DNA from: Histomonas meleagridis 2922-C6/04-290x
Taxonomy: Eukaryota > Protista > Parabasalia
Assembly (NCBI GenBank): GCA_020184695.1
Contig: JAANOX010000227.1
Coordinates: 62,001 to 126,000, forward strand
Direction: 5' to 3'
DNA: 64,000 nucleotides
Shown: positions 37,016 to 61,810 of the stretch, piece after piece
Layout: each line of letters opens with the position of its first letter
Numbering within the stretch: position 1 is the first letter of the stretch
Notes under the pieces: generated by a model
Databases searched by the model: none
The model's input: only the letters and a program-made list of their open reading frames with translations
Told to the model about the DNA's origin: nothing
Made by a program: the position numbers and the translations under genes

Positions 37016-37088
37016 GTACCACTGGCCCAATGGATAAGGCGTGTGCCTACGGAGCATGAGATTCCAGGTTCGAGTCCTGGGTGGTACA
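37016..37088 (+). tRNA. tRNA-Arg(ACG), copy 1
   Basis: Acceptor GTACCAC/GTGGTAC, anticodon loop CT-ACG-GA, T arm CCAGG-TTCGAGT-CCTGG, T7 terminator. Confidence 0.97.
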
Positions 37089-37129
37089 TTTTTTTGATTT
37101 TTTAGATGCAAGTATTTTTAAGTCGAGAA
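37073..37129 (+). repeat. Left copy of the 57-bp target-site duplication (tRNA 3' 16 nt + terminator + flank)
   Basis: Identical to 54949-55005. Confidence 0.93.
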
Positions 37130-37181
37130 AATGATACTACCGGAATCAGCACCCCTGATAACCTTATTAAGATTTCTTTTT

Positions 37182-37375
37182 GGTACTCTCCAAGCAAAAG
37201 GGAAAATTTGAATACCTTCCTCTCAAAAAGTGGAAATGCCTTTCAATTATGCGTGATTTTTTGAATAGCATTGAAAAATTTTCATTCAAAATATTTTTGT
37301 GAGAAAATATTCCTTCTCAAATTCGATTTCTATGTTCTACATTTTTTGACATAAAAATTTCTGAAAATTTATAAA
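37182..37375 (+). repeat. Left terminal inverted repeat of the 11-kb element
   Basis: Reverse complement of 47996-48189 at 185/194. Confidence 0.95.
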
Positions 37376-38822
37376 TTGCCATTGTATTTTTTAAATAATT
37401 TTAAATTATTCGATATTTTCAATTTTAATATGACAAATATGCACTGACACGCAACATTCTCAGATATAATATATTTATCGAACTCAATATTTATAATGAT
37501 AATATATATTAAATTCGTTTCCGAAATTCGGTCATAGGTATACTGGGAAGATATAAGAACTAGCCATTAAAAATACATAATATATGCACATAATTGAGGA
37601 TATTAATTAATATAAATATGAAATAATATTCATGATAAGTCAAGATAAATTTTTTTTCATTTTTAAAAGTGACAAATATCACTTTTGTATGGTTTATTTT
37701 CGTCGGTGCGCCGATGGTAAACGATATGACCAATAGATGCAAGATAAATGAGCAATAAATAAACATATTTCTTGATCAATTCATTGCAAATAAAGAAAAA
37801 AATACCAAAAAATATCATTAATCATTATTTGAAATAAAAATATATGAGGAGGGGGGTGGGGGTAAAAAAAGAACGACCCTTTTATCTCGACTTCTATTCA
37901 ATAAAAATTATTTTTAAATTATATCATATTTAAATATTCATTATTAAATCTAAATATGTGAGCATTATGTTCATCATGTCCAAATGCAATTGTTTTCAAT
38001 CATTAAATTTTTCTTTATAGACATTTAGAAATATTGCCAAATTGCATAATTATTGGTAGAGGAATGACATTAAATTCGATGAAGAAGTTATGTTTATATT
38101 AGATATATTAAATATACTATTAGTTAAAAAACCAATTTGTTACACTATCTATTGCATAATTCGAAGAATTGAGAATTTTCACCTTATTTAGAATATTTAT
38201 GTTCATTTGATTAATATTTGAAACTAATAATTTATCGTATTTCATAAAGAATATTGAAATATTATCAAGTTTTTTAAGCACAAAATATAATATCTTATAT
38301 ACTCAGTACCAAACAAATAAAGATCATGAAACTGGATTCTGCAATATATTTATTAATATATTACCACATATAAGTAAAAAAATGCAAACGAATTAGATAA
38401 ATCGAGAATAATAATAAGAGTAATTAAAGATTACATTAATATTTTATTTATTTTTTTAATATCATAATTTAAATTCCATTGAAAACAAAAAATCGGAAGA
38501 TATAATCAAGAATAAAAAAAATGTATATAAATATCTACAACAAAGAACAAATATAAAATATTATATAACGAGTTAAATATTACTAAAATACATCAGATAA
38601 TGAGATAACTCATTATTATAATAATTAATACAATGAACAACACATGTGTTGATAATTTAATTTATTATTGTTGATGATGCGAAATCATTTATTGTAAGTC
38701 ATAATAAATCAAAAAGATACAACAATTTTTATGCAACAAATTATTATCAAAAACCAATTTATCACTGAAATGATTCATTAATAAATTATGATTCATTATT
38801 GCATTAATGGAATAATCTTCTA

Positions 38823-40494
38823 TTATAATAATTCCAAGAACAGTGAAACTATGGCAATAACAATTCCTGTAATTGCACTTGGATGAAGCTTTGTACCATT
38901 ACTATGGCTCAATGGGCATACATCGCTTATTTTGTTACCCTTGGTAACATTGATCTCTGCAAAAGTGCTTTTAGAATATTCATTTGTTACATAAATAGTT
39001 GGACTATCAAATGTTGTATTATAACACGATGGTTCATTCTTACCATAGAAGCAAACAATTTCAAGACTCATGCATGAACTAAAAGCATAGTTATCTATCA
39101 CATTAATGTTCTCTGGAATGATAACTTTCTTAATGCTATTGCAATTGATAAATGCGCCTAATCCAATCGTTCTTACTGAGCTGGGAATATCAATACTAGA
39201 AATCAAAGAACAACCTTCAAATGCATATTCTTGGATTGCTAATATGGTTTTTTTGGAATTACAACATCACCTGATTTTTCCAGAAGGGCAAAAATATTAA
39301 TTTAGTAATATTTTTTTGTTATATACAATTCCGTCATTGTTATAATTGGAGTAATATACATTATTTAGTGAGATGGTTACAGATACTAAATTTGGACAAT
39401 TTTGAAATGCAAATAGACCAATTGAAACCACTGAGTCTGGAATATTGACATTGTGGAACAAACATCCATAAAACTGGAAGTCTTGTAATACTGTGATTGA
39501 ATTGGGAATACTTAAATTTGTCAACAAAGAACAATTAATGAACGAAAAAAGACACCAATTGATTTTTACAGAATTGGGGATATTTATATTTGTAATAAGA
39601 AAACAATCCTCAAATGCATAATCTTCAATTAATTGAACAGAACTAGGAATATTAACAATACCTTCTACTGCTGGTGGACATAATATTACTTTTTGATATG
39701 TTTTTTTATCATAAACAATTCCATCATTATTATAATTCGAATAGATTTCATTATTTTTCAGAGATTTTAATTGCCTTTAATTTTGTGCATGCATCAAATG
39801 CAGATTCATTAATTAGGGAAACTGAAGAAGAAATTTCAATTTGCTCTAAATTTAAACACCTATAAAACGCAAATTCTTGAATTTTTTCAACAGAATCTGG
39901 AATTATAACATTTGTTATCTGCCTGCAATCAGAAAAAAAGAGGAATATCCTATTGATTTTACAGAATTGGGGATATTTATATTTGTAATAAGAAAACAAT
40001 CCTCAAATGCATAATCTTCAATTAATTGAACAGAACTAGGAATATTGACAATACCTTCTACTGCTGATGGACATAATATTACTTTTGATATGTTTTTTTA
40101 TCATAAACAATTCCATCATTATTATAATTCGAATAGATTTCATTATTTTTCAGAGATTTTTAATTGCCTTTAATTTTGTGCATGCATCAAATGCAGATTC
40201 ATTAATTAAGGAAATTGATATAGGAATAATAAGCTGGTCCATAGAACAACCATAAAATGCATAATCTTTAATCGTTGTAACAGATTCACCGATTACTACA
40301 TTTGTTAATTTGCTCTGATTATAAAAAAAGCATGGCTATCAATCACAAATACATTGCTCCCAATTTGCAGTTTTGAAAAATGACCAATGGTTTCAATATC
40401 ATCTCGTGTAATAGTTGAAACATTAAAGACTTTAAGAGTATCATTTTCGAGAATAAAGTTACAGCATGTGAAAATAGGAAGAAGGTAAAAACAT
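38823..40494 (-). pseudogene. BspA-like LRR surface protein gene, frameshifted in this assembly, inside the 11-kb element
   Basis: Signal-like start at 40494; LRR_5 fragments (VIIPDSVEKIQEFAFYRC, IPSSVRTIGLGAFINC); TM-like C-terminus SAITGIVIAIVSLF; about 260-bp internal direct repeat with 394-bp offset (from 39558 and 39952). Confidence 0.8.
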
Positions 40495-40546
40495 GTATAA
40501 AAAAATAAATGCCATCTTTGGCAAATTTAAAAATTCAATTGTTCAA

Positions 40547-40942
40547 ATGTTTTTCTTGATCCCTATTATCATTGTTGCCAGACAATCAACAGAAAATAAT
40601 GAGGAAAACAGTGCTAAGCCAGGACTTTTAGTTAATGTTAAAGGAGATCTTGATTTCAACGAATTAATAGATCAAATCAGCAAAATAGTAGGTTTCTTGC
40701 TAACAGCAAAAAATGAAATTCCAACAAATGGAGGTGGTAGATTTATTACAGGTGTTGATTCCGGTAATGTTTATGCATTTTATTACCATCCGTCAAAGAG
40801 ACACAGAGTTTCATGTAGACCAGGACATGGCCAAAGAATTCAACCAAAAGATCCAGTATGGTTTGAGGCAAATGAATGGGCCTATGTTATTCTTAAATCA
40901 GCCTGGTATGGAGGTAATCGATGCTGGTATGATGATGAATAA
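40547..40942 (+). CDS. Secreted lactococcin-972-like bacteriocin-family protein
   Basis: Hydrophobic N-terminus MFFLIPIIIVA; C-terminal GGGRFITGV...VYAFYYHPSKRHRVS...ANEWAYV...GGNRCWY resembles the Lactococcin_972 family pattern, recognised by eye. The ORF track extends upstream to 40493. Confidence 0.62.
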   Translation: MFFLIPIIIVARQSTENNEENSAKPGLLVNVKGDLDFNELIDQISKIVGFLLTAKNEIPTNGGGRFITGVDSGNVYAFYYHPSKRHRVSCRPGHGQRIQPKDPVWFEANEWAYVILKSAWYGGNRCWYDDE

Positions 40943-43561
40943 ATCTAGATTAAGTGTAAGAACTTCAATCGATTTATTTAATTTTTAATAATTAAATAAT
41001 TTTTTAAATATATTTTAAAAAAATTTTTAATATTATTTTTATATTATTTAATGTTTTTTTATAATGTTTTTATGTTATTACCATATAATAATTTAGCTAT
41101 TTAAAAATATATTATTCGATTTTTTGATAAAAAAATGCCATTTTTTTGCTAAAAATGCCATTATAATCCAAAATTTCATCAAAATATTTGCATGTAGGAA
41201 TACAACAGATTATTTTTAAAATGTATATTGTTGATTGAAAACATGTGTTTTGATCAGAATTATTCTAATATTGAATAAAAAATATTATTTTTTTTTTTTT
41301 TTTTATGGAATTGTATGAGAAAATAATATAATGATAGCCTAACATAAATTTATGTTATGTACATGCATACAGCTTCATCAAATTTGTGTATTTTCACTTG
41401 TTTATTCATGCTTTTTTTTATTATCAAATGTTTTATCATGTTCATTCATGTTGTTCTATCTTATCTTGTGCTTATTCATGTTTTTTCTCATTATAAAACT
41501 TTTTTTCATATTATCTCATTTTGTATTAATAATTTTTTATGTTTGTTCACATAATTTCATATTTATTCGTGTTATATAATGTTTATAAATTAATTTTTGA
41601 ATGTTATCTCATGATTTTTCTATGTTATCTCATGTTATATCATATTTATTAATGTTTTTTTCATATTATCTCATGATTTAATATGTTGATTCATGTTTAT
41701 TCATGTTTTTCATTTTATCTGATATTTATTTATGATTTTTTTATGTTATCTCATGTTTATTCATTTATATTCTTTTTTTTTCTTGTCATAAAATGTTTAT
41801 TTATTAATTTTAATATTATCTCATGTTTGATTTGTTGTTCATTGTTTATTTTCAATGTATTATCTCCATGTTATTCATAATACATGTCATAATAACATAT
41901 AGTGAAATTTTTTATATTTTTCTATGAATTGTGTGACATTTTACACTTAATAATTCCATGAAAATCCATTTTGTTTATCAATATCAATAGATTTCAAGTT
42001 ATAACATTCGTCAAATGAAGTTCCATCAATGAAAATTACAGAATTAGATACTTATACTGTTGTTAATGCACTTTGTTCATTAAAAGAAAGTTCTTCTATT
42101 TCTTAAACAGTATCCCCTATAATTACTTATGTAAAATAATGATTAATAAATAGCAATTAATATATATAATAATTTATCATTTTTATGTTTCATTATGTTG
42201 TCTTCATTTGATTTTTGGTTTATTATATATTGTATATAATAGAAAAAGCAAATGAACAGGAAAAACTATATATATTTCATAAGAATATCAAATAACATAT
42301 GAAAAACACATTTGAACACCATAAATAACATAAGAATATGAATATTTACATTCGTAAACATATTGACTATGTAATTTACAATATATTATGAGGCTTGTTT
42401 TTATTGTAAGCTTTGCCGAATAATAACCCAATTTTTTGGGCAAGAAAAATAAATTATATATAAATAAAACTATAATATGCTGATGCATTAAATGTCAATA
42501 TACATATTCTACATAATAAGATAATATTTTAAAACTTTTTTCTTACTAACCAGAAATTAGGGTATTTAGATCAATTTATATTTACCCCCTATTCATATAT
42601 CAATAATATATATTTCGATTTTATGAATATATAAATATCTTATTTTTATCATAATATAATTGAATTTATATAAAACACCTTAAAGTTAATGTATCGATTT
42701 TTTTGTATAAGAAATTCTCTTAAATGATTATATTTTTTTAGATAATTTATGACTATTTACTCAAACAAGTGAAATAACTGCAGTTATAATGTGAAATAAA
42801 AAGGGTATTTTTCATCAAGTAGAGTTGCAAACATAAATTGTTATATAAAAATTAACATTGAGTTACGGATGAGAACCTTATTAGCTGACAACATAATTTA
42901 ATAACTTTCATACTTTAAATATAACATTAGACTTTCATTTGTTATAATATAAATAAAAAACTTCTTTCTAACTTTCATCAATATTTCTCAAAAATTCATT
43001 TGAATGTTGTACCATTTCATTTCTTCTAACAACAGTTAATTTATATGGGATCAGCTTTCGAACATATTCCATATAGTACAAAGCATACTTGAAAACTTTT
43101 AAATATATTTTATGTATTGCCTAATATTTAAATAATATGTTTTTTGTACTTGCATATGAATATTTTGGAAGGATCTATGTAAATGACTCAATTAAGTTAC
43201 TGTCGTCCATTTCATTAGTATATCGGAATAAGTATGATAAATTCACTTTTTTTGCATTTTTTACAAATCATTTTTACTAGATATCAATGATCATAATTTA
43301 TTCGATTACAAATATATTTAAACAAATTATTTTTTTATAAAAATTTAATTGGATTTAAATGATATATATAATCTTTAATTTAATGAGCTATTTATGAAAT
43401 ATTATATGAATTAATTGATTTTGCTGATTATAATATTTGATTAATATCGAATTAAACTAATAAATTAAATTTCTTTTTTTATGTATACGCTTTTATTTAT
43501 TATTCATATTAATAATAATTCAATATTGTATGCATTATGCGTTTAATATTTATTTGTTATT

Positions 43562-44521
43562 ATGAATTACAATCAGCCTCAACAATTATCTTTCCCGTTT
43601 ATCGATAATACTCTCTCTTATTTTTTTTTTTTTTTTAATGAAGACGCAGCTATTCAATTCGCATTACAGAATGGAGTTATTTATAATCAAATGATGTGTG
43701 AAGAATGTAATTTCTATATGCAGATCTACAGGGATTCTTCAAAAAGGATTTGGATACAAATGGATATGCACAAGATGCCACAAATCAAAAAGTATTTTAT
43801 ATGGAAGTATTTTTTACTCAGCAAAAATATCACTTTCTAAGATTTTTTATTTATTATATTGTTGGGTATATAAATATTCATGTAAAGATACTGCGAGAGA
43901 AGTAGGAGTGAGCAGAAACACAGTAACTTATTATTTTACTTTATTTAGAAATGCATGTGATGCATATGTTTTATCTTTAGAAGGTCTTGTTGTTGGCGGT
44001 CCTGATAAAACTGTTCAAATAGATGAAACTTTAATGTGTCGAAGAAAATATAATGTTGGACGATGTTTAAATCAAGTGTGGATCTTTGGGGGAATTTGTG
44101 TGGAAGATAGACAATTCTTTTGTCTTGTTGTACCTGATCGAACAAGAGAAACATTAGAAGAAGAGATTCGTAATCATATATTACCTGAAACAAAAATAAT
44201 TTCTGATTGCTGGAAAGCGTATGACTTTCTTGATGATGACAATGATTACGAGCATGAAACTGTTAATCATTCATGTAATTTTGTTGATCCTGAAACTAAA
44301 GCGCACACTCAAATGATAGAAAGACTTTGGAGGGAACTATTAATAAAAGATATGAAGGAATCCCAGAAAATAAAGTCAATGAACATATATCAGAGTTCAT
44401 GTGGAGATGGAATGTTATTCACAATAAGGATCAAATGTTTAGGGCCGCCGTTCAATTAATTGCAGACACAAAGTTTACAAAAGTAATTGATTGCGATGAA
44501 GAAGAAGAAAAGTTGGAATAA
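43562..44521 (+). pseudogene. Merlin/IS1595(ISXO2)-type DDE transposase with two frameshifts
   Basis: Zinc ribbon CEEC...WICTRC, VQIDET, WIFGG, ISDCWKAY, HETVNHS, HTQMIERLW and EFMWR; frameshifts near 43745 and 44340. Confidence 0.9.
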
Positions 44522-44589
44522 GTAAAAAAATCATATCTTCGATTGTTATGATCATTTTTATTTCTAGAAAATTGAGGATAGAAATATAA

Positions 44590-45140
44590 ATGATATTTTA
44601 TTATGTTATTTAAATATCGATTTGTGAAGATTTATGTTACAAATTTCGAAATTTCGAAAATTTAATTTTTTAAAAAAATATGTATATATTATCTTTATTT
44701 GATGACATATTTTATTATATTATTTAAATATTGATTTGTTTTAAATTTTTTTGTTACAAATTTTCGAAATTTTGAAAAATTTAATTTTTTTAAAAAAATC
44801 TGTATATATTATCTTTATTTGATAACATATCTTGTTATATTGTTTAGATTTTGTTTTTGTTTAAATTTTTTTGTTACAAATTTTCGAAAATTTTTGAAAA
44901 ATTTAATTTTTTTAAAAAAATCTGTATATATTATCTTTATTTGATAACATATCTTTTTATATTGTTTAGATTTTGTTTTGTTTAAATTTTTTGTTACAAA
45001 TTTCGAAATTTTGAAAATTTAATTTTTTAAAAATCTGTATATATTATCTTTATTTGATAACATATCTTGTTATATTGTTTAGATTTTTTTTTGTTTAAAT
45101 ATTTTGTTACAAATTTAGAAATTTTGAAAATTTAATTTTC
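44590..45140. repeat. About 113-120-bp tandem repeat, about 5 copies, just downstream of the transposase
   Basis: GTTACAAA anchor recurs at about 44636, 44753, 44873, 44993 and 45106. Confidence 0.9.
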
Positions 45141-47995
45141 GAAAAAGATCGTCATTAATAAATCCTATATCGTGGTAAACATTAATGTATTATATACACT
45201 TTAGTCCTATTAATTGTTTACATTAATTTCATATGTAAAAAATCTTCTCAATTTTTAAAAAAATCAAATAAATTCATTAATATAGCTCATTAATAAACTT
45301 GACATATGTTAAAAAAACTTCGATAAAATCTTATTCTATACATAAAAAATCGGCTTTTTCAGGAATAATTAAATTTATAAATTTTTTTCTGATTTCAGAT
45401 TTCAATCACATTTCTCATGTTTAGTAATGTATACATATTTAATCCCTCGAATTTTGTCCAACCAAACATATTGCAATCTTGAAAAATATAATAATTTTCG
45501 GTAAAATGATGTTCATTCAATTATTGAATGATAATTCAATATTTATACAGAAAATTCTGCGTAAAAAGCAGTTAATTCCAAACATTTATTCAAAAAGTGA
45601 ACATTTTTTTTGAAGAATTAATTATTACACACATTCATTTATGAGCGATAATATTATTTTATCTGGTAAATTTTTCATTTTTGTATGAAAAAAATAGTGA
45701 AATAATCTATTCTATTTTTAAAAAATGTTAGAATATTTTTTGAAATATAAATCTAATGAAATATATAATTTTTAATGACAAAAATTGATATAATTTTAAT
45801 TTGATAATAATCTTTTTTAAAATCTTACCAAAAACACACGGGGATTCAACTTATTTAAAGTCTTATATGTACATGACTGTATATCTTATAATTTTTTCTT
45901 AGTTAGCGAGAAAATAAGTGTATAAAGTTATTGTCATGATGCTAATTGATTTTTATGGCAAATATGAATTTATCGATCATTTGTTGATATGATTAAAATT
46001 AGTTCATTTTTTAATCATATTTATAATTAATAATCATTAATAAACAGTATATTAATCTTGAAATAGTTCAACATGAAAACATTTTTATTTTAGATCTTAA
46101 AAGTCTTCTTTGTAATTATAAATCACTTATATATATATATCCATTGAAATTTAACATTATTAAAGATTTTTATAGGTGATTTCACGAACCTTGATCCAGA
46201 AAATAATTGTAATTTACAATTTTCATAATTGTAGCATAAATATAATTTTCCGAAAAAATCATTTCTAAATATTTTATAGTTTCCCCTCTATAATAATGAA
46301 TGAAATCTACGCTCTCTTATATATTTTATTTCAAATTCATTAAGTACAATTACTTTTTATTACATTTCGAGTTACTACTATTTCTTATGCATAATATAAA
46401 GAATAAGTTAGGTATCATAATAATTCATATAATTATATTAAATTTATACATTTTGTTCATTGATAGATCAAGATAACTTAGAATATTTGAAAAAATTTCA
46501 TTATTTAAATCATAAGAGAGAGACTAAATTAAGGTAGAGAAGTCATAATTTATTATAATAAACAAATTAATATAATATTCATATTTAAAAAAAACATATA
46601 TACTCATTTTTATTAATTTAATTCATGCTTTGTTATATTTTTTAATTGACATGTATATTAAGTGTTTTTTTCAATGTTTTCCTATGTTTTTTTTTTTTTC
46701 CCCCCCCCCCCCCCAGTTCTTTATGTTATCTCAACTTTATTCATTTTTATTCTATATTTGATGATGCTATTTCATGCTTATCAAAAAATTAATATATTCC
46801 ATTCTTTTTTTATCTTGTTAAATTAAGCTTATTTATGCTTATTCATTTTAATTATGTGTTTTTCTCCTTGCATGTGGTATGAGTGTTATATGTGTTTATG
46901 TGCCGGATGATATATATTAAAGAAAATAGCTAGGAGATTTGCATAATACTTATTATATGATATTTATATTTAAATAATCTTGGAATAATATATTATTTCT
47001 CAAGGAAAATTTTAGTATTACCAAAATTGTTTGTAAAAACTAGTCTTTTACGATTATGGAATCGTAAATGGAGCTTTATAGATATTCATTAACATGTTAA
47101 TATTATTATAAATGATTAAAGGAATAAAAAAAAGCTAATAAAATTATAATTTTATATACAAATGTCATTAATAAATCTTGTTTTTTTATGAACACAGCCA
47201 AATAAGAAATGTTGAAATACCTAATTCTCTTTATTACAATAGAATAACTTATTTTATAGAATATTATTACATGAAATTATAATACCAAAATCAGCGATGT
47301 CAATTTCTCCAAAATATTTTTATCTCATATTGTATTATGTTCATATATGTTAAAACCATGCGATTTTTTTCGTGTTGTATTTCATTCGAATAATAGTAAG
47401 GAGGGATTTTTAATTATTCTATTTATTCACAATAAAGTAAGGACACTTAGTTTGAATAAACTTTATACAGTATTGAATCGAAAATTACTTTAAATGAATT
47501 CAAATAATATTGTTATTTCATTTGATCTATTATATCTTGTAGCTTATTCACTCATGATTCTTCATGTTTACTTATGTTAATTCAAATTCATTTGTGTTTG
47601 TATATATACCTACTCATGTTCATTAATGAATGCTATAGTTAATTCATGTTTATTTATTATTCTTTATGTTGTTTTTTTAATAAAAATCTTGACAATTGTT
47701 TTTAAAATGAAAAAATCTCAATATTAACTGAATATAAAGAAAAATTAATGAAACTTTTAATATATCATATAATTTTAATAAATGTGATAAAGATATTTTT
47801 CAACTATTTAATTTTAAGTGAAAATGATTATCTATAATAAAAAAAATTCGAATATTTTAATATTTAACAAAAAGCATTAATTATTATATATGTTTTTTGG
47901 TTTACAGATCAAAATTATGAATGTGTACTGATTTATCAACAAAGCAATATTTTTTTGGTGGCGACCGTTCAAAGTAAAAATCTATTTGGTGACAT

Positions 47996-48189
47996 TTTAT
48001 AAATTTTCAGAAATTTTTATGTCAAAAAATGTAGAACATAGAAATCAAATTTGAGAAGGAATATTTTCTCACAAAAATATTATGAATGGGAATTTTTCAA
48101 TGCTATTCAAAAAATCACGCATAATTGAAAGGCATTTCCACTTTTTGAAAGGAAGGTATTCAAATTCTCCCATTAGGTTGGAGAGTACC
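47996..48189 (-). repeat. Right terminal inverted repeat of the 11-kb element
   Basis: Reverse complement of 37182-37375 at 185/194. Confidence 0.95.
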
Positions 48190-48325
48190 TTCTTTTTGGA
48201 CGGAAAAAATTTTTTCGGAGATAAATAATTTCGAGATAATTTCTCCAGAAATCATCGATAGTCTATACAGAACACAGCAGGAACACCTCCAGAACGACCA
48301 CAACACATCTAGAGGTATCATTAGT

Positions 48326-51300
48326 TTGAACGGAGAAATTTCGAAAAATGTGATAAATTCACCCATCACAGAATTACTTCAATTTAGCACCTACAACCTT
48401 ATTCCACCACAAAACACATTCCCATGTTTGTTTTATCCACTTTGTCAACGAATTTTTTATACATTTTCAGAATGCATCAAACATGCATATATGGAAGAAG
48501 AGCATGAACCACAAGAAATCAACCAACTAAAACGTTTCTTACCTCACGAACTCACATTATACGCTTGTTTATATGAAAGATTCAAATTCCAAGTCCCAAA
48601 TATTATCAACAATTTAATACCATTTTTCATTTTATACTCATGAAGAAGGTTTTGTTATACGTAAATGTCCTTTACCAAATTGTAATTATTTTATTAAAAA
48701 AACCCTGATGATTTTTCGGCAGCATTTCGCCGATCACATAAACCAGTTAAAAATCCTAGATCAATCATTTGCCACTAACGGTTATATTTGGTCGATAATT
48801 ATTAGTCATGTTAAAATTCGTAACAAAATCCCTACAGTTAGAGAATTTCTTGGAATTCCTGATACAAATATTTTAATACCAAGAAATGTTATTAGTAACA
48901 ACTCTAACATTCCAATTTTAATTTTATTAAGAAACATTGATTTTAATTTTAATAACTCCCCACCTTGGTTAGGATTAATTAATAGAAACATGGGTTTAAC
49001 AGTTCCAGTTCTACCAATTCAATTTATAGATGGTGGTTTAATTATAGATAATATTGACTTAAACAATATCAATAATATTCCCCAAATTCCTCTGAATAAT
49101 GACCCTAGAGTCAAAGAAATTACAAATAATGGGGAACTAATCAACTGTGAAATATGTGATACGATTCCAATTATTGAAGAAGTAAGTGATGAGTTAATGA
49201 TTAGAAATGATAAAATAAATGAGTTAAGAAATAGATTATTATCTTTTATTCTACACATATTAGAGAATAACTTTAGAAACAATTCTGGAAACTATAATCA
49301 AGTTCATACAAATGAAGAAGAAGTTAAAAATCAAAATACCAGAAGTTTCTATTGAGCGTGAAATAATTCCTATTAAAATCCCGGAAACTAAAATTACATT
49401 ATTTAATCAAGAAATTAATATTCCTGCCTATTCTATGGCACAAGTGCCAGTTAATATAGAAATCCCTAATTATCAATTAATTCAACGTGACATAGAATAT
49501 CCCATAGATATACCGAATTATGTTAGAAATCCAACTACATTCGAAATAGGTATTCCAGACTATCATAAATATCAAGTACCAATTGAAAAACCAGAGTTTA
49601 ATATAGTTAAAAGTAAGATTGACGTCCCAGTTGATACACCTAATTTCGTATATAAACCTAAAGATATTTTAATACCTATCGAAAAGCCAAATTATCAATT
49701 AGTAGAAAGTAAAATTGATGTTCCAGTCGAAATCCCAAAGATAGATTTCTATGAAAATCGGATCAAAAATGGATATAGATGTCATGAAATATGATTTTAG
49801 AGATATTTCAGTTCCCATAGATATACCAAGACCTAATTTCAATATTATACCAAAACAAATCGACATTGAGATACCAGTTCCAAACTTTAGATTTAATAAT
49901 AATGTAAACTTACAACAACAACAACAAAATGATCAATTAACATATGAAGGGATTAATCAAGATATTCAAAATATTACTCAAAATTCAAATCATGATAATG
50001 AAAATAATGTAAATGTTACACAAGATACAAATAATAATAACAATAATGAAAGAAATAATCATGATAATGAAGAAAATAATAGAGAATTATTACACAAACC
50101 AGAAGATTTAATTGAAGAGTTAAGGAATGTGAACTCTGAAAAAGATTTAAAAGAAATAATCGATAAATGGACTTCTTATAATATTAATAATATTTCAGAT
50201 TGGATAGATGATAATAAACCCTTGGAAGAACATTATATTACAAACTTAATAGTTATTAAAAGGAAATGGCCAGGTGTGAATACATTTGTCTGTCCACATG
50301 CATGTGGTTTCGCAACACATTCTAATACATTATTAGATATACATCAAAGAGAAGTTCATAATAAAATATTAAAAGGGAATCAAATATTAGAAACAATTGG
50401 ATCAATTATTAATAAGAAAACATTTTGGAAAATTATCACATATGAAAGTAATGGTAATAAAAGGAAAACTTATCGGAAAACTTTATGGAATTGTCCTTGT
50501 CCAAGTTGTAAATATGTAGGTGACTTAAAAAAACAGGATTAGCTAATCATGTTCGAAAAGTTCATCCACAATACAACAAAGATAAGAACATTTATGGTTG
50601 GTTTTGGGCAATGATTTTACAATGGGTCAAGCATCCGTTGAAAAGGAACCCACCAACTATAAAGAAATTGTTCAAGTCCAAAAAGATTAAAGAATGTAAT
50701 TATTGCAGAGCCATTGGAACCTCAATAAATAATATAGGTTTACATGCTAAATCAATGCATGGTGCATCTAGAGTAGAAGGAAATCAAGGAAAATTTGAAG
50801 ATGCTATTGCTAAATCTTACATTAATAAAGAATTAACAGAAGATAAAATTAGATTTATCAAATCTAAATGTAAAGAGAATGAAGATGAAATGGAAAACAT
50901 TAGAGAAAGAATTAAAAAAGCTGAAGATGAACCTATCAATATACAACAACCAGTACAACAAAATCAAATAAATAATAATAATGATGATAATAATAATGAA
51001 GAAATAATTAATAGAAGAAGAAAAAGTGAAGAAAGACAAAGACTAAGAGATAGAAAAATGATTCAAAGAATTGAGAACAATATTATAATCAATCAACAAA
51101 TAGAAGAAGTTAATAATAATAATGAAGAAGAACAACAATCACAAAATCAAAATGAAGAAGAAGAAATTATTCCAAATATTATTATCATTAATAATAATAA
51201 TCAACCTAATAATTTAGAACAAGAAAATTTAGATAATTTATTAAATAAAGCAAAGAAATGAATCAAAAAATGTGAACGAGAAGAATCAAATGGAATCAGT

Positions 51301-54300
51301 GTACCTAAATGTACAGAGAAGATTAGAAGATCTTTAAGAAAACCTATAAGTAAATTATTAAAGAATAAAATTATTCCATTAATGAAGAAAATCAAAATTA
51401 AAAACAACTATCGAATTAATGATCAAAAATGGTTTATAATGGAAGTAATTATAGCAAAAATGATTATATCCATTAGAAAAACTATTCGAACAGTTTTAAA
51501 GATCCCAATTAACAAAATGTAAAGAAGACGACCAATTCTAAACAAAAACAATAATAACGAAGAAGAATTAAGAAGAGAAAGAATTAGTTATGAAGAAGAA
51601 AGACATATTACAAATCTCATTTCTAATATCGAGAAATATTTAGAATGAAATAATCGAGAACAAAATCAAAATATTTTAAATAGTATATCAATCATTAAAG
51701 ATAAATTAGTAGATATTTTACATAAATTAGATGATGATTTTATTAACAGAACATTCGGAGGAAGAAAAATTCAAGATATTAGATCTTTTATAAATGAAGA
51801 AGAAGAATTTCGAAATATGAAATTTAACTGGATTAAGAATACATTAGAAGATGAAATTGCTACCAGAAGTGGTATTTTAAGTGAAAAATATAAAGAAAAG
51901 ATTCAAAATTTATATCAAGAAGATTCTAGAAAATGTATTAATTGGCGTATCTGTAAAAATCCTACACCAGAATGTCCTTTAACTTTAAATCAATTTGAAG
52001 AATTCTTTAAAAATGAATGGAACTCTAAAATTGATTTTCATCCACCTAATAATGATTCTAAATGGAATTTAGATAATTGTTTTAAAAAAGAAGATAAAGA
52101 TTTATTTATTACTATGTTATTAGATAAAGATAGAATTAAAGAAGTCATTAGATCTAGACCAAATTTAAGTGCTCATGGTATCGACGGTATTTCTAACTCA
52201 ATTTGGAAATCTAATATTAATATTACATTCAAAATTATTAAATATATAGTTTCTTATATGATTTTATATGAAAGAATTTCAGAAAGTTGGAAATCATCAA
52301 AAACTATTTTATTATATAAGAAAGAAGCACCAGAAGAATTAAGATCTTGGAGACCAATTAGTATTTCTAATACTATATATCGAATTATCTTTTGTTTATT
52401 TTTAAAATGTATTCAAGATATCAATTATAAAATCAATATCATTAATAGAGTTCAAAAAGGATTTAAAGAAGGAATTAATGGAGCAGCAGAACATATTGAA
52501 ACAATTAATGAATTAATTTCTAATGCCAGAAGAAAGAAACAAAGTATTTATATTACAGCTTTAGATTTTACTAATGCTTTTGGTACAGTACCTCATGAAT
52601 TAATTACCTGGGCATTAAAAGCCAAAGGTTTTCCAGATAAGTTTATTGATATTATAAAAAATTCTTATAAGAATTCATACACGAAAATATTTTATAAAGG
52701 AAATAATTCTAGACCAATATTCGTCAAAAGAGGTGTAAAACAAGGATGTCCTTTATCACCTACATTATTTGATTTATGTTTAGAACCGCTATTAAAAGCA
52801 ATTCAAATTAAAAATAAAGATGATGGTATATTAATTGAAGACGAAATCAATAATGAAATACTTAGATTCAATATTCAAGCGTATGCAGACGATGTTATTT
52901 TAATGTCTAGTTCAGAAGAAGGTATGAATAATATGTTAAAGACAGTTGAAAAGTTTTGTAAATTTTCAGGAATGGAATTAGCAACTAAAAAATGTAAATC
53001 TCTATATTATACTTATACTGATAGAACAAGAAATACATTAAACATTAACTTTAATATTAACAATGAAATTATTCCACAAATTTCTTTATTTTCTTATATT
53101 GAAAATTTAGGAATCCCAATAGCTTGTAATAGAGCTATTAAGAAGAAACATTCTAGATTAATTATTAATGAAATAAAGAACCAAATTACTAAAATTATGG
53201 AATCTCCATTAAAGATTACTCAGAAGATAGATTGTATTAAAAGACTAATTACGCCAAAATTTGACTATATTCTATTAAATAGTGTTTGTCCGTTAAATGA
53301 ATTAAAAGAAATAGATAAATATATTAGAGGTTGGATTAATAAATTATGTAAATCTAAAGGTATTCCTATTAATTATTTTTATACGAATTGGAGATATGGA
53401 GGATTAGGTATGAAAAGTTTATATGAAAGATACCAAATTCTTACAATTAGAAATTACATTGCGATGAAATATTCTAAAGAAAATATTATTCGGAAATTTA
53501 CTAATCAAATGGAGAAAGATGAAATAGATTATAGAGGACTTATTAAAGATGGAGAAAGTCCTTATCTTAATTTTAGATTTGATGATCAAAACAATTTAAT
53601 GCAAACTAGAAGAAACAAAGAACATTGTTTATTTATTGAAACATTAAAAAGTTTATCAAACTTACAAATTATTTTTATTATTGACAAAAAAAATGAAAGT
53701 ATTAAATTAGGAGATTTTAAAGATGAGATAGTTGAACAAAATGTCGAATCAGACAAAATTCTAGAGCAATTGAACCAATTAATCTGTGTTAGACACAGAA
53801 ATGCTCTAATTTCATCTGATTTTAAAGGACATACGTTCAATACTCTCATTGATTCGAAGACTTCAAATTATTTCTTTACTCAATGCAAATACCCAATCAG
53901 TGATACTCTAGCAAAATTTGTAATATTAAGTAGAACCAATAATTTAAGCACTGGTGAAATATTACATAAAAATAAACCAGAAGTATTTGATGGTAAATGT
54001 CATAGATGTCATAGTAATTTAAATGATTCATTAATGCATAGATTAAATGGTTGTCATATAATTAAAAGTTGGTTTACACCTAGACATAATGCAATCTTAA
54101 AAGAAGTTATTAAAAGTATTAAAGAAAAAGATAGAGAAAATAAACTAATTATTAATTATGATAAACCTATTAAAAAGAATCAATTAAGATTACCAGAAAG
54201 ATCTAAAAGATTAAAACCAGATGCTTGGTTCTTCACAGATAATATATTAAATATTATTGAGGTTAATTGTCCTAATGGAAGTCTTAAAGATACAGATGAA

Positions 54301-54861
54301 GGTAAAATTAACTCATCAGTAATTAGAAGACAAGAAAAACTAGATAAATATAACAATCTAGTTGGAGATTGTAACAATACCTTCAATTGTACCACCAATA
54401 TTTATGTAATAATTGTCTCATCATTAGGTGCAATACCTAAAGAAACCTATAAAGATATTAAAATATTATTACATAACGACAAATATAAAGCAAAATTAAC
54501 AACATCCAAATGATGTTCAATGGTAGCTTTAAGAGAATCTCTTAAAATTTATCGAAAATGGGGTACATATAATATCAAGGATAATTTAACCAATGAAGAA
54601 AATATAGCAGAACAAATTGAAGAAGAAGTCGAACACAACGGTGACACGGATGATGGTTTCGACAATGATAACACTGACGAAGATCTGAACATTGAAGATG
54701 AAGATCTGAACATCGAAGATGAAGATTCGATTATTGAAGACGAAGATACGAATGAAGAAAATTTAGAAGATGAACAAGTACATGATACACACAGGACTCA
54801 TTTAACTCTTGAATATGGGGTCGGGTTCGAGAGTTTAGAAAGTAACGATGAATCACAATAA
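48326..54861 (+). pseudogene. Single long retrotransposon ORF (5 C2H2 fingers, Pro/Ile/Val-rich repeats, RT, CCHC knuckle, PD-(D/E)xK endonuclease) broken by about 4 frameshifts and 4 in-frame stops
   Basis: RT: WRPISISNTIYR, QKGF, LDFTNAFGTV, GVKQGCPLSP, YADD. Knuckle: CHRC..HRLNGC. RLE: RHN, KPDAW, IIEV. In-frame stops at 51259, 51520, 51646 and 54511. Confidence 0.92.
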
Positions 54862-54948
54862 TAATACTAATTAAGTATTAATTATGTTAAAGCGGGAGCG
54901 CTAAAATCATTTAAAAGTGACACTTTAATACTCGGTATGCTAATAAAC

Positions 54949-55005
54949 AGTCCTGGGTGGTACATTTTTTTGATTTTTTAGATGCAAGTATTTTTAAGTC
55001 GAGAA
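54949..55005 (+). repeat. Right copy of the 57-bp target-site duplication (begins with the 3' 16 nt of tRNA-Arg)
   Basis: AGTCCTGGGTGGTACATTTTTTTGATTTTTTAGATGCAAGTATTTTTAAGTCGAGAA, identical to 37073-37129. Confidence 0.93.
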
Positions 55006-55252: not shown

Positions 55253-55325
55253 GTACCACTGGCCCAATGGATAAGGCGTGTGCCTACGGAGCATGAGATT
55301 CCAGGTTCGAGTCCTGGGTGGTACA
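55253..55325 (+). tRNA. tRNA-Arg(ACG), copy 2
   Basis: Identical to 37016-37088; oligo-T terminator follows. Confidence 0.97.
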
Positions 55326-55371
55326 ATTTTTTTCATTTTTTGATGCGAAGTGTTTAATATCTTAAAATTTT

Positions 55372-56751
55372 GTACCACTGGAATCAACATCCCTGATAAC
55401 CTTATTAAGATTTCTTTTTGGTCGGAAAATTTTTTTTTCGGAGATAAATAATTTCGAGATAATTTCTCCTTGAATCATCGATACTCTATACAGAACACAA
55501 CAGGAACACCTCCAGAACGACCACAACACATCTAGATACCTCTAGAGGTATCATTAATTTTAACGGAGAATTTTTGAAAAATGTGATAAATTCACCCATC
55601 ACAGAATTACTTCAATTTAGCACCTACAACCTTATTCCACCACAAAACACATTCCCATGTTTGTTTTATCCACTTTGTCAACGAATTTTTTATACATTTT
55701 CAGAATGCATCAAACATGCATATATGGAAGAAGAGCATGAACCACAAGAAATCAACCAACTAAAACGTTTCTTACCTCACGAACTCACATTATACGCTTG
55801 TTTATATGAAAGATTCAAATTCCAAGTCCCAAATATTATCAACAATTTAATATCATTTTCGTTTCATTAAGAAACATCGATTTTGATTTTAACAACTTGC
55901 CACCTTGGTTAGGGCTAATTAATAAAAACATGGGTTTAGCAGTTCCAGTTCTACCAATTCAATTTATAAATGGTGACCTGATCAAAAATAATATTGACTT
56001 AAACAATATAAGTAATATTCCCCAAATCGATCTGAACAATGACCCTACAGTCAAGGAAATTACAAATAATGGGGAACTAATCAATTGTGAAATATGTGAT
56101 ACGATTCCAATTATTGAAGAAGTAAGTGATGAATTAATGACTAGAAATGATAAAATAAATGAGTTAAGAAATAGATTATTATCTTTTATTCTACACATAT
56201 TAGAGAATAACTTTAGAAACAATTCTGGAAACTATAATCAAGTTCATACAAATGAAGAAGAAGTTAAAATCAAAATACCAGAAGTTTCTATTGAGCGTGA
56301 AATAATTCCTATTAAAATCCCGGAAACTAAAATTACATTATTTAATCAAGAAATTAATATTCCTGCCTATTCTATGGCACAAGTGCCAGTTAATATAGAA
56401 ATCCCTAATTATCAATTAATTCAACGTGACATAGAATATCCCATAGATATACCGAATTATGTTAGAAATCCAACTACATTCGAAATAGGTATTCCAGACT
56501 ATCATAAATATCAAGTACCGATTGAAAAACCAAATTATCAATTAGTAGAGAGTAAAATCGATGTTCCAGTTGATACACCTAATTTCATATATAAACCAAA
56601 AGACATCCTAATACCTATTGAAAAACCAGAATATCAATTAGTGGAAAGTAAAATTGATGTCCCAGTTGAAACATCTAATTTTATATATGAATCGGAAGAC
56701 ATTTTAGTACCTATTGAAAGGCCAAACTATCACCTATTAGAGAGGAAATAA
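55372..56751 (+). mobile_element. 5' part of a second copy of the RLE retrotransposon (internal deletion of about 310 bp relative to copy 1)
   Basis: High similarity to 37135-37181 plus 48198-49740; ORFs 55574-55870 and 55897-56751 are near copies of the copy-1 ORFs. Confidence 0.92.
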
Positions 56752-57984
56752 AAAATGCATAACCAAAAATAACATCAAAATAGGGAAATTTTTTTGAAAT
56801 GCTTTTTGCAGGATTTTATTGAATTGGGTTTGTTTCAATATTTGATCTTGCTTGCATATTTTGCTTAACTTGTATTATTTGTATAGTGACGGTGCGTAAT
56901 TGACATTGTTGCCAACTGCTACATCCAGATTCTGAGCAATTCTAATTTGAAGATGAGTTTCGATATTCATTTTTTATCTATAGTTTCTGAACAAGTGCTT
57001 TTGTTATGATAAACCAATTTACAACATCTTCTTCATGTTCTTTTTTGCTTTGCAATTTCTTTTGGATGCTTATGCCTCTTAATTATTATAAGCAGGCCAG
57101 GGTGACTTTTATTCTTAAGAATAAAAATGTCATTTGCTTTCAAAATTCCCATACTTTGAATTTCAAAGTTATTTATATAAACATTCCTGATAATTTCATA
57201 GTGATTAAACGATGAGATGCTCTTTAATTTGCATCAACAAAGCTCTGTCTACATCTTTCATATCTTGATAAATCTTTTCGCGAAAATCTCTTTAGTCGCT
57301 TTTTATCGGGAAAAATTGAGTCCCATTCCGGTTTTGCTTTGTCTGATCAAAACCATTTGAAAAATTAATGTCACATTTTTTTGAAGAAAAGCACTCTGAA
57401 ATACTCAATAAATAATAGAAACAAAGACTTAAAATTGTTATTAATTTGGTATCATCATTTGAAATTTCATAGCATTCTCTGCCATATTTTTCATTATTTT
57501 TGTTGAAATAGGTTCCTTTGCATTTGAACTTTTTTATCCATGCATAACATTTATAAGACCTCGCATTAATTGTCTGAAACTTTGATCATGAACTGTAAAA
57601 TTATCGCATTTATCAATTATTCTGCACCTATATGAAAAGGCAAACACAAATTGACAAATGTATCCATAAGTTGTAGTAGGATGTTGACTCTTATAATATA
57701 CAATAAACGCACGTCTCTTTTTCGCAGCACATGGAAATGGATTTGGACCGGTCTCCAAATAAGTTGTTTCGTAAACATGCAATAGAGATTGATATGTTTT
57801 CTGTGTTACAAGTTATAACTTTTGAGAGCGAATGTTATTTTCTTTATTTAATTGTATTTTTTTTTTATCGCTCTCATAAAATTGAATAAAATGATAAGGT
57901 TCATTAATAATACAATATTTATAATATCAAAGTTATCGCAAAAAATATTTCACAGTTTTTGACATTTACAAATGAAGGTAAAAT

Positions 57985-61387: not shown

Positions 61388-61810
61388 TAAAATTACCTTA
61401 TTAGTGATTAGAAGAAAAAAAAATTAGATAAATATAATAATTTAATTGAATATTGTAATAATACCTTTAATTGTACCACCAATCTTTTTGAAATAATTGT
61501 TTCATCATTAGGTGCAATACCTAAAGTAACCTATAAAGATATCAAAATATTATTACATAATGACAAATATAAAGCGAAATTAATATCCAAAAGATGTTCA
61601 ATGTTGGCTTTAAGATAATCATTAAAAATTTATCGAAAATGGGGTACATATAATATCAGGGACAATTTAGTTAATGAAGAAGATACAGCCGCACAGATCG
61701 AAGAGGAAGTTGAACACAATGGAGACAGAGATGATGATTTGAATAATGATAGTAGTGAGAACAATAGTAATGAAGAAGATTTGAACATTGAAGATTAAGA
61801 GTCGATCATT
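61388..61810 (+). mobile_element. 3' remnant of retrotransposon copy 2
   Basis: Aligns with about 54302-54740 (IIVSSLGAIPK, KIYRKWGTYNI). It has AGA where copy 1 has the TGA at 54511. Confidence 0.85.

What the first reader, a model, noticed from the sequence alone, without database searches (positions are those of the whole stretch)
37016..55005. tRNA-Arg(ACG)-targeting RLE retrotransposon whose 57-bp TSD rebuilds the target gene
Seen: an intact tRNA-Arg and its terminator precede the element. The element's 3' end (…TAATAAAC, no poly-A) joins AGTCCTGGGTGGTACA, i.e. the tRNA T-loop at TTCG^AGT. The 57 bp from that point are duplicated perfectly on both sides. The ORF has five C2H2 fingers, RT, a CCHC knuckle and a PD-(D/E)xK endonuclease. 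Established: R2-superfamily RLE elements insert by target-primed reverse transcription into multicopy RNA genes (R2/R4 in rDNA, CRE/SLACS and NeSL in spliced-leader genes, Utopia in U2); CRE-type TSDs can be tens of bp. Inference: the first nick is inside the conserved T-arm (B-box) and the second cut is 57 bp downstream, beyond the Pol III terminator. The upstream tRNA is therefore regenerated and the insertion would be nearly neutral, a self-made safe harbour. I do not know whether this exact family is catalogued.
Basis: partly seen in the sequence, partly recalled or inferred. Interest (0 to 1): 0.9.

Follow-up and report, generated by a model that had tools for sequence, protein, structure and literature searches.

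The report
Retrotransposon family targeting tRNA-Arg genes
A broken copy of an R2/NeSL-type retrotransposon sits just behind an intact tRNA-Arg gene of a parabasalid protist; it belongs to a set of sister families, each tied to one tRNA gene type, a kind already reported from Trichomonas, and the striking 57-bp repeat is mostly the element's own leader rather than duplicated target DNA.

Summary
The 57-bp perfect repeat (37073-37129 = 54949-55005), the intact tRNA-Arg(ACG) and the poly-A-less 3' end (...AATAAAC) are real. The 17.9 kb between the repeats is composite. It holds a 6.8-kb RLE non-LTR retrotransposon (37089-37181 + 48198-54948) split by an 11-kb Merlin transposon. Its ORF carries a frameshift and four in-frame stops.

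Targeting is strongly supported. Seven of 11 tRNA-Arg(ACG) genes in the genome are followed at base +1 by this element, and their upstream flanks are unrelated. Sister families sit the same way behind tRNA-Lys, Ile, Met and Cys genes, often as head-to-tail stacks.

The "57-bp TSD" is not supported. The 41 nt after the tRNA travel with the element in every occupied locus and are missing from the four empty ones. A first-time insertion in the Lys family repeats only the last ~16 nt of the tRNA. So the element supplies the terminator-bearing trailer, and only 14-16 nt of tRNA are duplicated or mimicked. How the second 41-nt leader copy arose is unresolved.

tRNA-specific RLE elements are published (NeSL-1_TV, tRNA-Pro, Trichomonas; Kojima & Jurka 2015). 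This is a new member of a known kind. Other first-stage notes flagged sister elements elsewhere in this genome.

The parts
37016..37088 (+). tRNA-Arg(ACG) gene #1. It is intact and identical to the copies at empty loci.
   Evidence: ARAGORN; identical 73-nt sequence at 11 loci
37073..37129 (+). Left copy of the 57-bp repeat: the last 16 nt of the tRNA (37073-37088) plus the 41-nt element leader (37089-37129).
   Evidence: leader conserved in all occupied loci
37089..37181 (+). 5' end of retrotransposon copy E1. The leader starts with T7-GA-T6 (Pol III terminator-like) and holds the conserved AATGATAC motif at 37130-37137. It is cut off by the Merlin insertion.
   Evidence: homology with six other copies starts at base +1 after the tRNA
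37182..48189 (.). Nested 11,008-bp Merlin-type DNA transposon. TIRs lie at 37182-37381 and 47990-48189; the 8-bp TSD TTCTTTTT lies at 37174-37181 and 48190-48197; a DDE_Tnp_IS1595 ORF lies at 43698-44459. It is not part of the retrotransposon.
48198..54948 (+). Body of E1. E1 totals 6,844 bp without Merlin and ends ...GCTAATAAAC.
48425..50760 (+). N-terminal region with four complete C2H2-like fingers (48425-48505, 48666-48737, 50291-50359, 50695-50760) spread over three reading frames. A frameshift lies near 50542-50611.
51817..54513 (+). 898-aa open stretch holding the RT (RVT_1, about 52327-53007), the CCHC motif (about 53998-54054) and the RLE motif PD...E...K (from about 54217). TGA at 54511 is AGA in copy E2, so the frame originally ran to about 54861. 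In-frame stops upstream lie at 51259, 51520 and 51646.
54949..55005 (+). Right copy of the 57-bp repeat: a 16-nt tRNA 3' fragment plus a solitary 41-nt leader. It is followed by non-element DNA that begins like a native tRNA trailer (GAATA + T8).
55253..55325 (+). tRNA-Arg(ACG) gene #2, intact.
55326..61813 (+). Second, degenerate copy E2. It has its own diverged leader and 5' 1.35 kb (55326-56671). The RT region is replaced by unrelated DNA. A 3' fragment lies at 61387-61813, and the 3' junction is lost.

Best explanation
E1 is a dead copy of a site-specific, R2/NeSL-type non-LTR retrotransposon. It encodes N-terminal C2H2 fingers, an RT, a CCHC motif and a restriction-like endonuclease, and its family inserts only into tRNA-Arg(ACG) genes.

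Shown: every 5' end of the family abuts base 73 of an intact tRNA-Arg. The one preserved 3' end joins the last 16 nt of the tRNA. Sister families do the same at tRNA-Lys(UUU), Ile(GAU), Met(CAU) and Cys(GCA) genes.

Inferred mechanism: target-primed reverse transcription starts from a bottom-strand nick in the T loop (about N59^T60). The top strand is cut at, or very near, the tRNA 3' end. Only about 14-16 nt of tRNA are therefore present on both sides. The element's own 5' leader, which begins with two T-runs, becomes the new trailer and Pol III terminator of the rebuilt gene.

Because the tRNA is rebuilt, it stays a target. New copies stack in front of old ones, giving head-to-tail arrays separated by 16-nt tRNA fragments.

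The 57-bp repeat of E1 is the 16-nt tRNA fragment plus a second copy of the 41-nt leader. That second copy is either left from an earlier occupant or copied from a read-through donor transcript. It is not duplicated native target DNA.
For: Specificity: 11 tRNA-Arg(ACG) genes were found and 7 are followed by the element. All family 5' ends start at base +1 after a tRNA-Arg or are cut by a contig end. Upstream flanks are unrelated, apart from 156 bp shared by two neighbouring loci on the same contig and one 27-bp match.

Element-borne leader: it is 88-100% identical in six occupied loci, more diverged in E2, and absent from the 4 empty loci. The same pattern holds for Lys (6 of 8 genes occupied), Ile (5-6 of 15) and Met (5 of the 6 loci read).

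Short duplication: in the Lys copy on C61, an unrelated trailer follows directly after the 17-nt tRNA fragment.

3' junctions lie at the same tRNA position in four families.

Stacks occur on C269 (Ile, three leaders), C14 (Lys) and C19 (Cys).

Protein type: RVT_1 E 2e-34. R2 proteins are the best PDB hits, with two matched stretches against one for L1 ORF2. The CCHC and PD..E..K residues are invariant.

RT tree: copies cluster by associated tRNA with 100/100 support.

Precedent: NeSL-1_TV of Trichomonas is tRNA-Pro-specific (PMC4640811).
Against: Only one 3' junction survives in the Arg family itself, so the short-duplication rule is borrowed from the Lys family (about 50% RT identity).

The solitary 41-nt leader lies exactly between the tRNA fragment and a native-looking trailer, and it is 100% identical to E1's own leader. 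An 'older occupant later deleted' would need an oddly precise deletion.

The nick positions are inferred from junctions only. No RNA ends or biochemistry are available, and the read data were uninformative.

How an RNA beginning with a T-run directly after a tRNA is transcribed is unknown.
Confidence: 0.6

Rival explanations
1. Same family and same specificity, but a different cut geometry. Both strands are cut at the tRNA/trailer boundary (after base 73). The 16-17 nt after ...AATAAAC are not duplicated target. They are a tRNA-3'-end mimic forming the element's own 3' tail. E1's extra 41-nt leader was copied from a donor transcript that read through its 3' end into the leader of the next element in a stack (3' transduction), and TPRT started at the very end of that RNA.
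For: In one event this gives exactly the observed order ...AATAAAC / 16 nt / 41-nt leader / native-type trailer. Bases 58-59 at the junction differ from the local tRNA in 5 of 9 junctions, and the variants are shared within subfamilies as if templated: Lys AAG on C29 and C14 versus AAA on C153 and C61; Ile AA/AT versus tRNA AG. Stacked donors that would yield such read-through RNAs exist. The element ends in AATAAA(C), so RNA 3' ends downstream of it are plausible; this last point is inference from my knowledge of parabasalid poly(A) signals.
Against: Positions 60-73 are never mutated in any of the 9 junctions, which is what real target DNA would give. In the stacks the 16 nt are followed by a single leader, not two. 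No known RLE element works this way.
Confidence: 0.22
2. The bottom strand is nicked at TTCG^AGT and the top strand 57 bp downstream. The 57 bp are a genuine duplication of the local tRNA 3' end plus its native trailer and terminator.
For: The two 57-bp copies are perfect and end sharply. Long TSDs are reported in some RLE lineages, e.g. 20 bp for reptile Utopia. An empty tRNA-Arg locus (L045) has a trailer weakly similar to the 41 nt, so the leader may ultimately derive from a native trailer.
Against: The same 41 nt follow the tRNA at six other loci with unrelated upstream flanks and are absent from four empty loci. In four sister families no locus-specific sequence ever lies between tRNA and element. 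The Lys C61 copy shows a duplication of at most 17-18 nt. A 57-bp stagger is still possible for this one event if the target already carried a solitary leader, but the duplicated trailer was then element-derived, not native.
Confidence: 0.1
3. The copies spread as DNA, by segmental duplication or gene conversion of tRNA+element units, rather than by repeated site-specific retrotransposition. The 57-bp repeat is then a recombination product.
For: tRNA #2 and tRNA #3 on the same contig share 156 bp of upstream flank. E1 and E3 are 100% identical over the first 527 nt. Two inverted tRNA pairs with identical upstream flanks, one occupied and one empty, exist on C79 and C191.
Against: Upstream flanks of the other occupied loci are unrelated right up to the tRNA. 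The loci lie on five contigs. The flank shared by tRNA #2 and #3 is discordant with element relatedness, since E3 resembles E1, not E2. Four to five families show the same precise junctions.
Confidence: 0.05

Closest known systems
NeSL-1_TV of Trichomonas vaginalis (Repbase; Kojima & Jurka 2015, PMC4640811)
   Same: It is an RLE-bearing non-LTR retrotransposon of a parabasalid reported as specific for one tRNA gene (tRNA-Pro). The nearest named relative of the present RT is a Tritrichomonas foetus protein (48% identity).
   Different: The target tRNA differs. The insertion position, TSD and leader of NeSL-1_TV could not be read (supplementary figure illegible). No sequence of it was available, so relatedness is untested. 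Here at least five to seven sister families with different tRNA targets coexist.
LIN15_SM (tRNA-Arg) and LIN25_SM (tRNA-Glu) of the planarian Schmidtea mediterranea (same paper)
   Same: They are NeSL-related RLE elements with tRNA-gene specificity, including a tRNA-Arg target.
   Different: In the readable part of S6 Fig their 3' junctions lie further 5' in the tRNA, around the anticodon arm. About half of the tRNA follows the element there, not 16 nt. They are in animals and are only distantly related at best.
R2 (28S rDNA) and the wider R2/NeSL/R4/CRE group of RLE elements
   Same: The domain order is the same: N-terminal zinc fingers, RT, CCHC, PD-(D/E)xK endonuclease. The 3' junction is precise and lacks poly-A, and insertion is into a multicopy RNA gene. 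R2 proteins are the best structural-database matches.
   Different: R2 inactivates the 28S unit it enters. Here the target gene is rebuilt, and its terminator is supplied by the element. No Myb domain was detected. No ribozyme was looked for.
Utopia (U2 snRNA gene-specific NeSL-like elements)
   Same: It is site-specific in a small Pol II/III RNA gene, with precise 3' and variable 5' boundaries. The TSD is 0-20 bp depending on lineage.
   Different: The target and clade differ. Utopia is not reported to restore the target gene.
Dictyostelium TRE5/TRE3, yeast Ty1/Ty3, and Dada DNA transposons
   Same: They use tRNA genes as safe-harbour landmarks.
   Different: TRE and Ty integrate at a distance upstream or downstream through Pol III factors and carry APE or integrase, not RLE. 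Dada elements are DNA transposons (otherwise my own knowledge).
Phage and ICE integration into bacterial tRNA gene 3' ends
   Same: The functional logic is the same: the incoming element carries or recreates the 3' end of the tRNA gene, so the gene survives integration (established knowledge).
   Different: That is tyrosine-recombinase site-specific recombination in bacteria, not TPRT. The analogy is functional only.

Membership tests
RLE-bearing non-LTR retrotransposons (R2/NeSL/R4/CRE group) | LINE-type reverse transcriptase domain | tested here: met
   RVT_1 E 2.4e-34. R2 and L1 ORF2 structures are the top PDB hits.
RLE-bearing non-LTR retrotransposons (R2/NeSL/R4/CRE group) | C-terminal CCHC motif followed by a PD-(D/E)xK restriction-like endonuclease; no N-terminal APE endonuclease | tested here: met
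   C728, C731, H741, C746, P801, D802, E815 and K841 are invariant in 15 relatives. The HMMER alignment places the CCHC and KPD motifs on those of R2. The profile matches R2 in two stretches, E 1e-106. No Exo_endo_phos hit. No fold comparison of the RLE domain was run.
RLE-bearing non-LTR retrotransposons (R2/NeSL/R4/CRE group) | N-terminal C2H2 zinc fingers | tested here: met
   Four complete C-x2-5-C-x10-14-H-x3-6-H motifs and one split motif. Only one weak Pfam hit (zf-C2H2_ZN142, E 2e-4, below cutoff).
RLE-bearing non-LTR retrotransposons (R2/NeSL/R4/CRE group) | Sequence-specific insertion into a multicopy gene with a fixed 3' junction | tested here: met
   7 of 11 tRNA-Arg(ACG) genes are occupied. 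Junctions lie at the same tRNA position in the Arg, Lys, Ile and Cys families.
NeSL clade (as used by Repbase / Kojima & Jurka 2015) | RT phylogeny placing the element with NeSL-1, NeSL-1_TV and Utopia rather than with R2, R4 or CRE | not testable with these tools
   No Repbase or named NeSL/R4/CRE reference sequences were available. The tree shows only that all genome copies, Tritrichomonas and metagenomic relatives form one clade apart from four animal and Acanthamoeba sequences.
Autonomous (active) element | Uninterrupted coding capacity | tested here: not met
   E1 has a frameshift, four in-frame stops and an 11-kb Merlin insertion. Some sister-family copies do have long open frames, e.g. 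1461 aa on C20.
Merlin / IS1595 DNA transposons (nested insert) | TIRs, 8-9-bp TSD, IS1595-type DDE transposase | tested here: met
   ~200-bp TIRs at 94.5%, 8-bp TSD TTCTTTTT, DDE_Tnp_IS1595 E 5e-11.

The most novel reading that the evidence does not exclude
The genome holds a radiation of at least five to seven sister RLE retrotransposon families. Each is locked to a different tRNA isoacceptor gene, and each rebuilds its target by supplying a terminator-bearing leader. In the most novel reading, the 16-17 nt tRNA-like tail and leader carried in the element RNA, rather than the zinc fingers alone, guide or template the choice and repair of the target. That would be an RNA-assisted, retargetable form of site-specific retrotransposition.
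Probability: 0.12. Interest if true: 0.85.

Novelty: new member of a known kind. Interest (0 to 1): 0.45.

Why it matters
Site-specific RLE retrotransposons are being developed as templates for safe-harbour gene insertion. They are also textbook cases of 'symbiotic' transposon strategies.

This genome offers a natural comparative series. Several related proteins each recognise a different tRNA gene at the same structural position, and occupancy is very high (64-75% of the Arg-ACG and Lys-UUU genes). That occupancy is tolerated because the gene is rebuilt with an element-supplied terminator.

The series could show how target specificity is switched in this enzyme class. It could also show how an insertion inside a gene can be made neutral.

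For this particular finding the main value is corrective. The eye-catching 57-bp 'TSD' is not what makes the insertion harmless.

Tried and rejected
1. The ATG inside the conserved AATGATAC leader motif as the ORF start. It opens no long ORF in any copy. I dropped it, together with the idea that a UTR/CDS boundary explains the end of the 57-bp repeat.

2. A sharp divergence boundary at +41 between E1 and E2 as evidence for a real TSD edge. On inspection, E2's leader is homologous throughout, with a local ~20-nt variable patch.

3. The 247 bp after the right repeat as a decayed older element. Local alignment scores no better than shuffles.

4. An empty paralogue test. The trailer of the empty tRNA-Lys on C79, which shares its upstream flank with an occupied gene, was searched genome-wide to find the occupied copy's downstream flank. 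Only the self hit came back.

5. The C60 Arg-family copy as a possible 5'-truncated junction. It is cut by the contig end, and its 3' end is replaced by unrelated DNA.

6. Sequencing runs. Four small runs of uncertain kind ('RNA?'), available only as contigs, cover parts of the element body but not the tRNA, leader or junction. They say nothing about transcription or RNA ends.

I replaced them with a coordinate-only tRNA list and about 350-nt fetches.

8. Pfam finds no zinc-finger or protease domains in the N-terminal halves of intact relatives.

9. The family {C56, C1, C251} has a 3' end ...AAATAAAC followed by sequence with no T-run. Its target was not identified.

Full report
WHAT IS IN THE SEQUENCE

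ARAGORN finds tRNA-Arg(ACG) at 37016-37088 and a second identical gene at 55253-55325. A perfect 57-bp direct repeat lies at 37073-37129 and 54949-55005 (sequences). It starts at AGTCC in the T loop, runs through the last 16 nt of the tRNA, and continues 41 nt further. The 16-mer occurs three times in the window against none expected. Left of the second copy the sequence ends ...GCTAATAAAC with no A-run.

The 17.9 kb between the repeats is not one element. A self-comparison shows that 37182-37381 is the inverted complement of 47990-48189 (94.5%). An ORF at 43698-44459 carries a DDE_Tnp_IS1595 domain. The insert is flanked by an 8-bp duplication TTCTTTTT that is single in an uninterrupted copy. 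This is an 11,008-bp Merlin-type DNA transposon nested 93 nt into the retrotransposon.

The retrotransposon copy, E1, is therefore 37089-37181 plus 48198-54948, or 6,844 bp. A second degenerate copy, E2, follows tRNA #2. It has a 5' 1.35 kb and a 3' 430-nt fragment, the RT region is replaced, and the 3' junction is lost. A third tRNA-Arg with a third copy, E3, lies 2.2 kb past the window end.

CODING CAPACITY

The 898-aa open stretch at 51817-54513 has RVT_1 (E 2e-34). Its best matches among solved structures are R2 proteins: E 1e-42 for the single sequence, and 1e-106 with two matched stretches for a 15-sequence profile. L1 ORF2 scores 1e-21 and 1e-50 with one stretch. In that alignment C728, C731, H741, C746 and P801, D802, E815, K841 are invariant, and HMMER lays the CCHC and KPD motifs on those of R2.

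Upstream are four complete C2H2-like fingers and one split finger.

The gene is broken, however. Alignment to intact relatives of 1,430-1,560 aa shows a frameshift near 50542-50611 and in-frame stops at 51259, 51520, 51646 and 54511. The last stop is AGA in E2.

IS IT TARGETED TO tRNA-Arg? YES

The genome is 43.1 Mb in 281 contigs. It belongs to a parabasalid: the nearest named protein is from Tritrichomonas foetus at 48% identity. The assembly size fits Histomonas meleagridis as I remember it, but I did not verify this.

The genome has 11 tRNA-Arg(ACG) genes. Seven are followed by the element and four are empty. A search with the element's first 527 nt finds every family 5' end either starting at base +1 after a tRNA-Arg or cut by a contig end. 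Upstream flanks of the occupied genes are unrelated, apart from 156 bp shared by tRNA #2 and #3 on this contig and one 27-bp match. These are therefore separate loci, not copies of one duplicated segment.

An RT search finds more than 30 related loci at 36-76% identity. Even a partial tRNA list (top 63 hits only) puts a same-strand tRNA 1.2-5.4 kb upstream of the RT at 14 or more of them.

Reading about 350 nt at those tRNAs gives these counts:
- tRNA-Lys(UUU): 6 of 8 occupied.
- tRNA-Ile(GAU): 5-6 of 15 occupied.
- tRNA-Met(CAU): 5 of the 6 loci read are occupied (a seventh candidate, on C245, was not fetched).
- tRNA-Cys(GCA): occupied copies present.

An RT tree groups the copies by their tRNA with 100/100 support. 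It also shows two further groups. One of them ends ...AATAAAC followed by a different tRNA-like 14-mer and a T-run. Other first-stage notes on this genome report Met, Lys, Tyr and Asn elements. I confirmed Met and Lys and did not check Tyr or Asn.

THE JUNCTIONS

3' junctions were recovered for four families:
- Arg: E1.
- Lys: C153, C61, C29 and C14.
- Ile: C11 and C269 (twice).
- Cys: C19.

In all of them ...(A/T)AAAC is followed by one to three bases and then T60-N73 of the cognate tRNA. Positions 60-73 always match the tRNA. Positions 58-59 do not match in five of nine junctions: Ile has AA or AT where the tRNA has AG, and Lys C29 and C14 have AAG where the tRNA has GAA. For Arg alone the two positions cannot be told apart.

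THE 57 BP ARE NOT A DUPLICATION OF NATIVE TARGET

Five observations bear on this.

1. The 41 nt after the tRNA are 88-100% identical at six occupied Arg loci and recognisably homologous at the seventh, E2. The four empty loci have other trailers; one of them, L045, is weakly similar.

2. In the Lys, Ile and Met families too, homology between copies starts at the first base after the tRNA. No locus-specific sequence lies in between.

3. The Lys copy on C61 spans 6.7 kb from tRNA to 3' junction. It has the family leader at its 5' side. At its 3' side, directly after the 17-nt tRNA fragment, it has an unrelated trailer of native type. At a naive site only the tRNA end is repeated, and the leader comes with the element.

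4. Where 3' flanks do look like leaders, they are whole downstream elements. C269 is tRNA-Ile / element / 16 nt / element / 16 nt / leader, and C14 (Lys) and C19 (Cys) are built the same way. Because the tRNA is rebuilt, it is hit again, and copies stack.

5. The leaders of different families share a T7-NN-T6 start, like native trailers here, and an AATGATAC motif 40-80 nt in.

The terminator that keeps the tRNA functional is therefore supplied by the element.

WHAT THE RIGHT-HAND 41 nt ARE REMAINS OPEN

The right-hand leader copy is 100% identical to E1's and E3's leaders. It is the only solitary leader of the Arg family found in the genome. The next 247 bp are not element-derived and begin GAATA + T8, like a native trailer. 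I see three possibilities:

(a) An earlier occupant was reduced to its first 41 nt. Arg-family copies do form a series that keeps the 5' end and loses the 3' end (E3, C279, C259, C48, E2). This would need a remarkably precise deletion.

(b) A long staggered cut was made in a site that already carried such a solitary leader.

(c) E1 was copied from a donor transcript that read through ...AATAAAC into the 16 nt and leader of the next element in a stack, with priming at the tRNA/trailer boundary. In that case the 16 nt are an element-borne tRNA mimic and there is no TSD at all.

Option (c) explains the order of the parts in one step, and also the apparently templated 58-59 variants. It is unprecedented, and the single leaders seen in stacks do not fit it easily. 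I rank it second.

MECHANISM (INFERRED)

1. The zinc fingers and RLE recognise the tRNA gene.
2. The bottom strand is nicked in the T loop, and TPRT copies the RNA from ...AATAAAC(A/N).
3. The top strand is cut at or near base 73. The upstream half therefore keeps a whole tRNA, and the 14-16 nt appear on both sides.
4. Second-strand synthesis copies the leader first.

How an RNA that starts with a T-run right after a tRNA is made is unknown. RNase Z processing of a tRNA-element co-transcript would give exactly this 5' end, but nothing here tests that. The sequencing runs found are contigs of uncertain kind and do not cover the junction.

COMPARISON WITH WHAT IS KNOWN

Kojima and Jurka (2015, PMC4640811) state that NeSL-1_TV of Trichomonas vaginalis is tRNA-Pro-specific. 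They also report that planarian LIN15_SM and LIN25_SM target tRNA-Arg and tRNA-Glu genes. Their supplementary junction figure is only partly legible.

tRNA-gene-specific RLE retrotransposons, including one in a parabasalid, are therefore an established kind. I found no paper describing such elements in this organism, a multi-tRNA radiation, the element-supplied terminator, or the stacking. Repbase could not be consulted. NeSL-clade membership is plausible but untested.

VERDICT

The targeting and safe-harbour idea is supported. The 57-bp TSD mechanism is not supported. This is a new member, in fact a set of new members, of a known kind. It is of moderate interest, chiefly as a natural series for studying how target specificity switches and how a target gene is repaired.

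Noticed in passing
window 37182-48189: An 11-kb Merlin/IS1595-type DNA transposon with ~200-bp TIRs and an 8-bp TSD TTCTTTTT is nested 93 nt into the retrotransposon. Besides the transposase ORF (43698-44459) it carries several kb of repeats and other ORFs. Other first-stage notes mention BspA-like and bacteriocin-like genes at 38776-40942.
   Followed up: partly
window 56671-61387: In copy E2 the whole RT region is replaced by about 4.7 kb of unrelated DNA with minus-strand ORFs (58345-60835; 111-346 aa). I did not determine whether this is another mobile element or a rearrangement.
   Followed up: no
G000 C79:113642-113714(-) / 127387-127459(+), and C191:217848-217920(+) / 230442-230514(-) (loci L060/L061, L075/L076): Two pairs of inverted identical tRNA genes (Lys and Ile) have identical upstream flanks for at least 25-50 nt. 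In each pair one gene is occupied by the retrotransposon and the other is empty, and the shared sequence stops at the tRNA. This suggests tRNA- or element-mediated rearrangements, or large inverted duplications ending at tRNA genes.
   Followed up: partly
leaders: window 37130-37137; L056, L065, L032 and others: A conserved AATGAT(A/T)C motif lies 40-110 nt downstream of the tRNA in the leaders of the Arg, Lys, Ile and Met families. It is not the start of a long ORF, and its function is unknown.
   Followed up: partly
L009 (G000 C56) about 4480-4700; L014 (C1): A further RT family (C56, C1, C251) ends ...AAATAAAC, followed by sequence without a T-run and then a ~100-bp tandem repeat. Its insertion target is not a recognisable tRNA 3' end.
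   Followed up: no
L017 (G000 C175, minus strand) and L021 (C20): Another family ends ...AATAAA(AA)C followed by CACACGGGAGGAGA, a T-run and a leader with AATGATAC. This is a stacked copy at a tRNA I did not identify. The C20 copy has an uninterrupted 1,461-aa frame.
   Followed up: partly
window 17069-17140 (+) and 28300-28371 (-): Two tRNA-Ala(UGC) genes lie in convergent orientation 11 kb apart. No RT hit lies between them, and I did not examine them for element remnants.
   Followed up: no
window 33346-36267 (-): A 973-aa ORF with RNA polymerase Rpb1 domains 1-5 (largest-subunit gene) ends about 750 bp upstream of tRNA-Arg #1. It is an ordinary host gene next to the insertion site.
   Followed up: no
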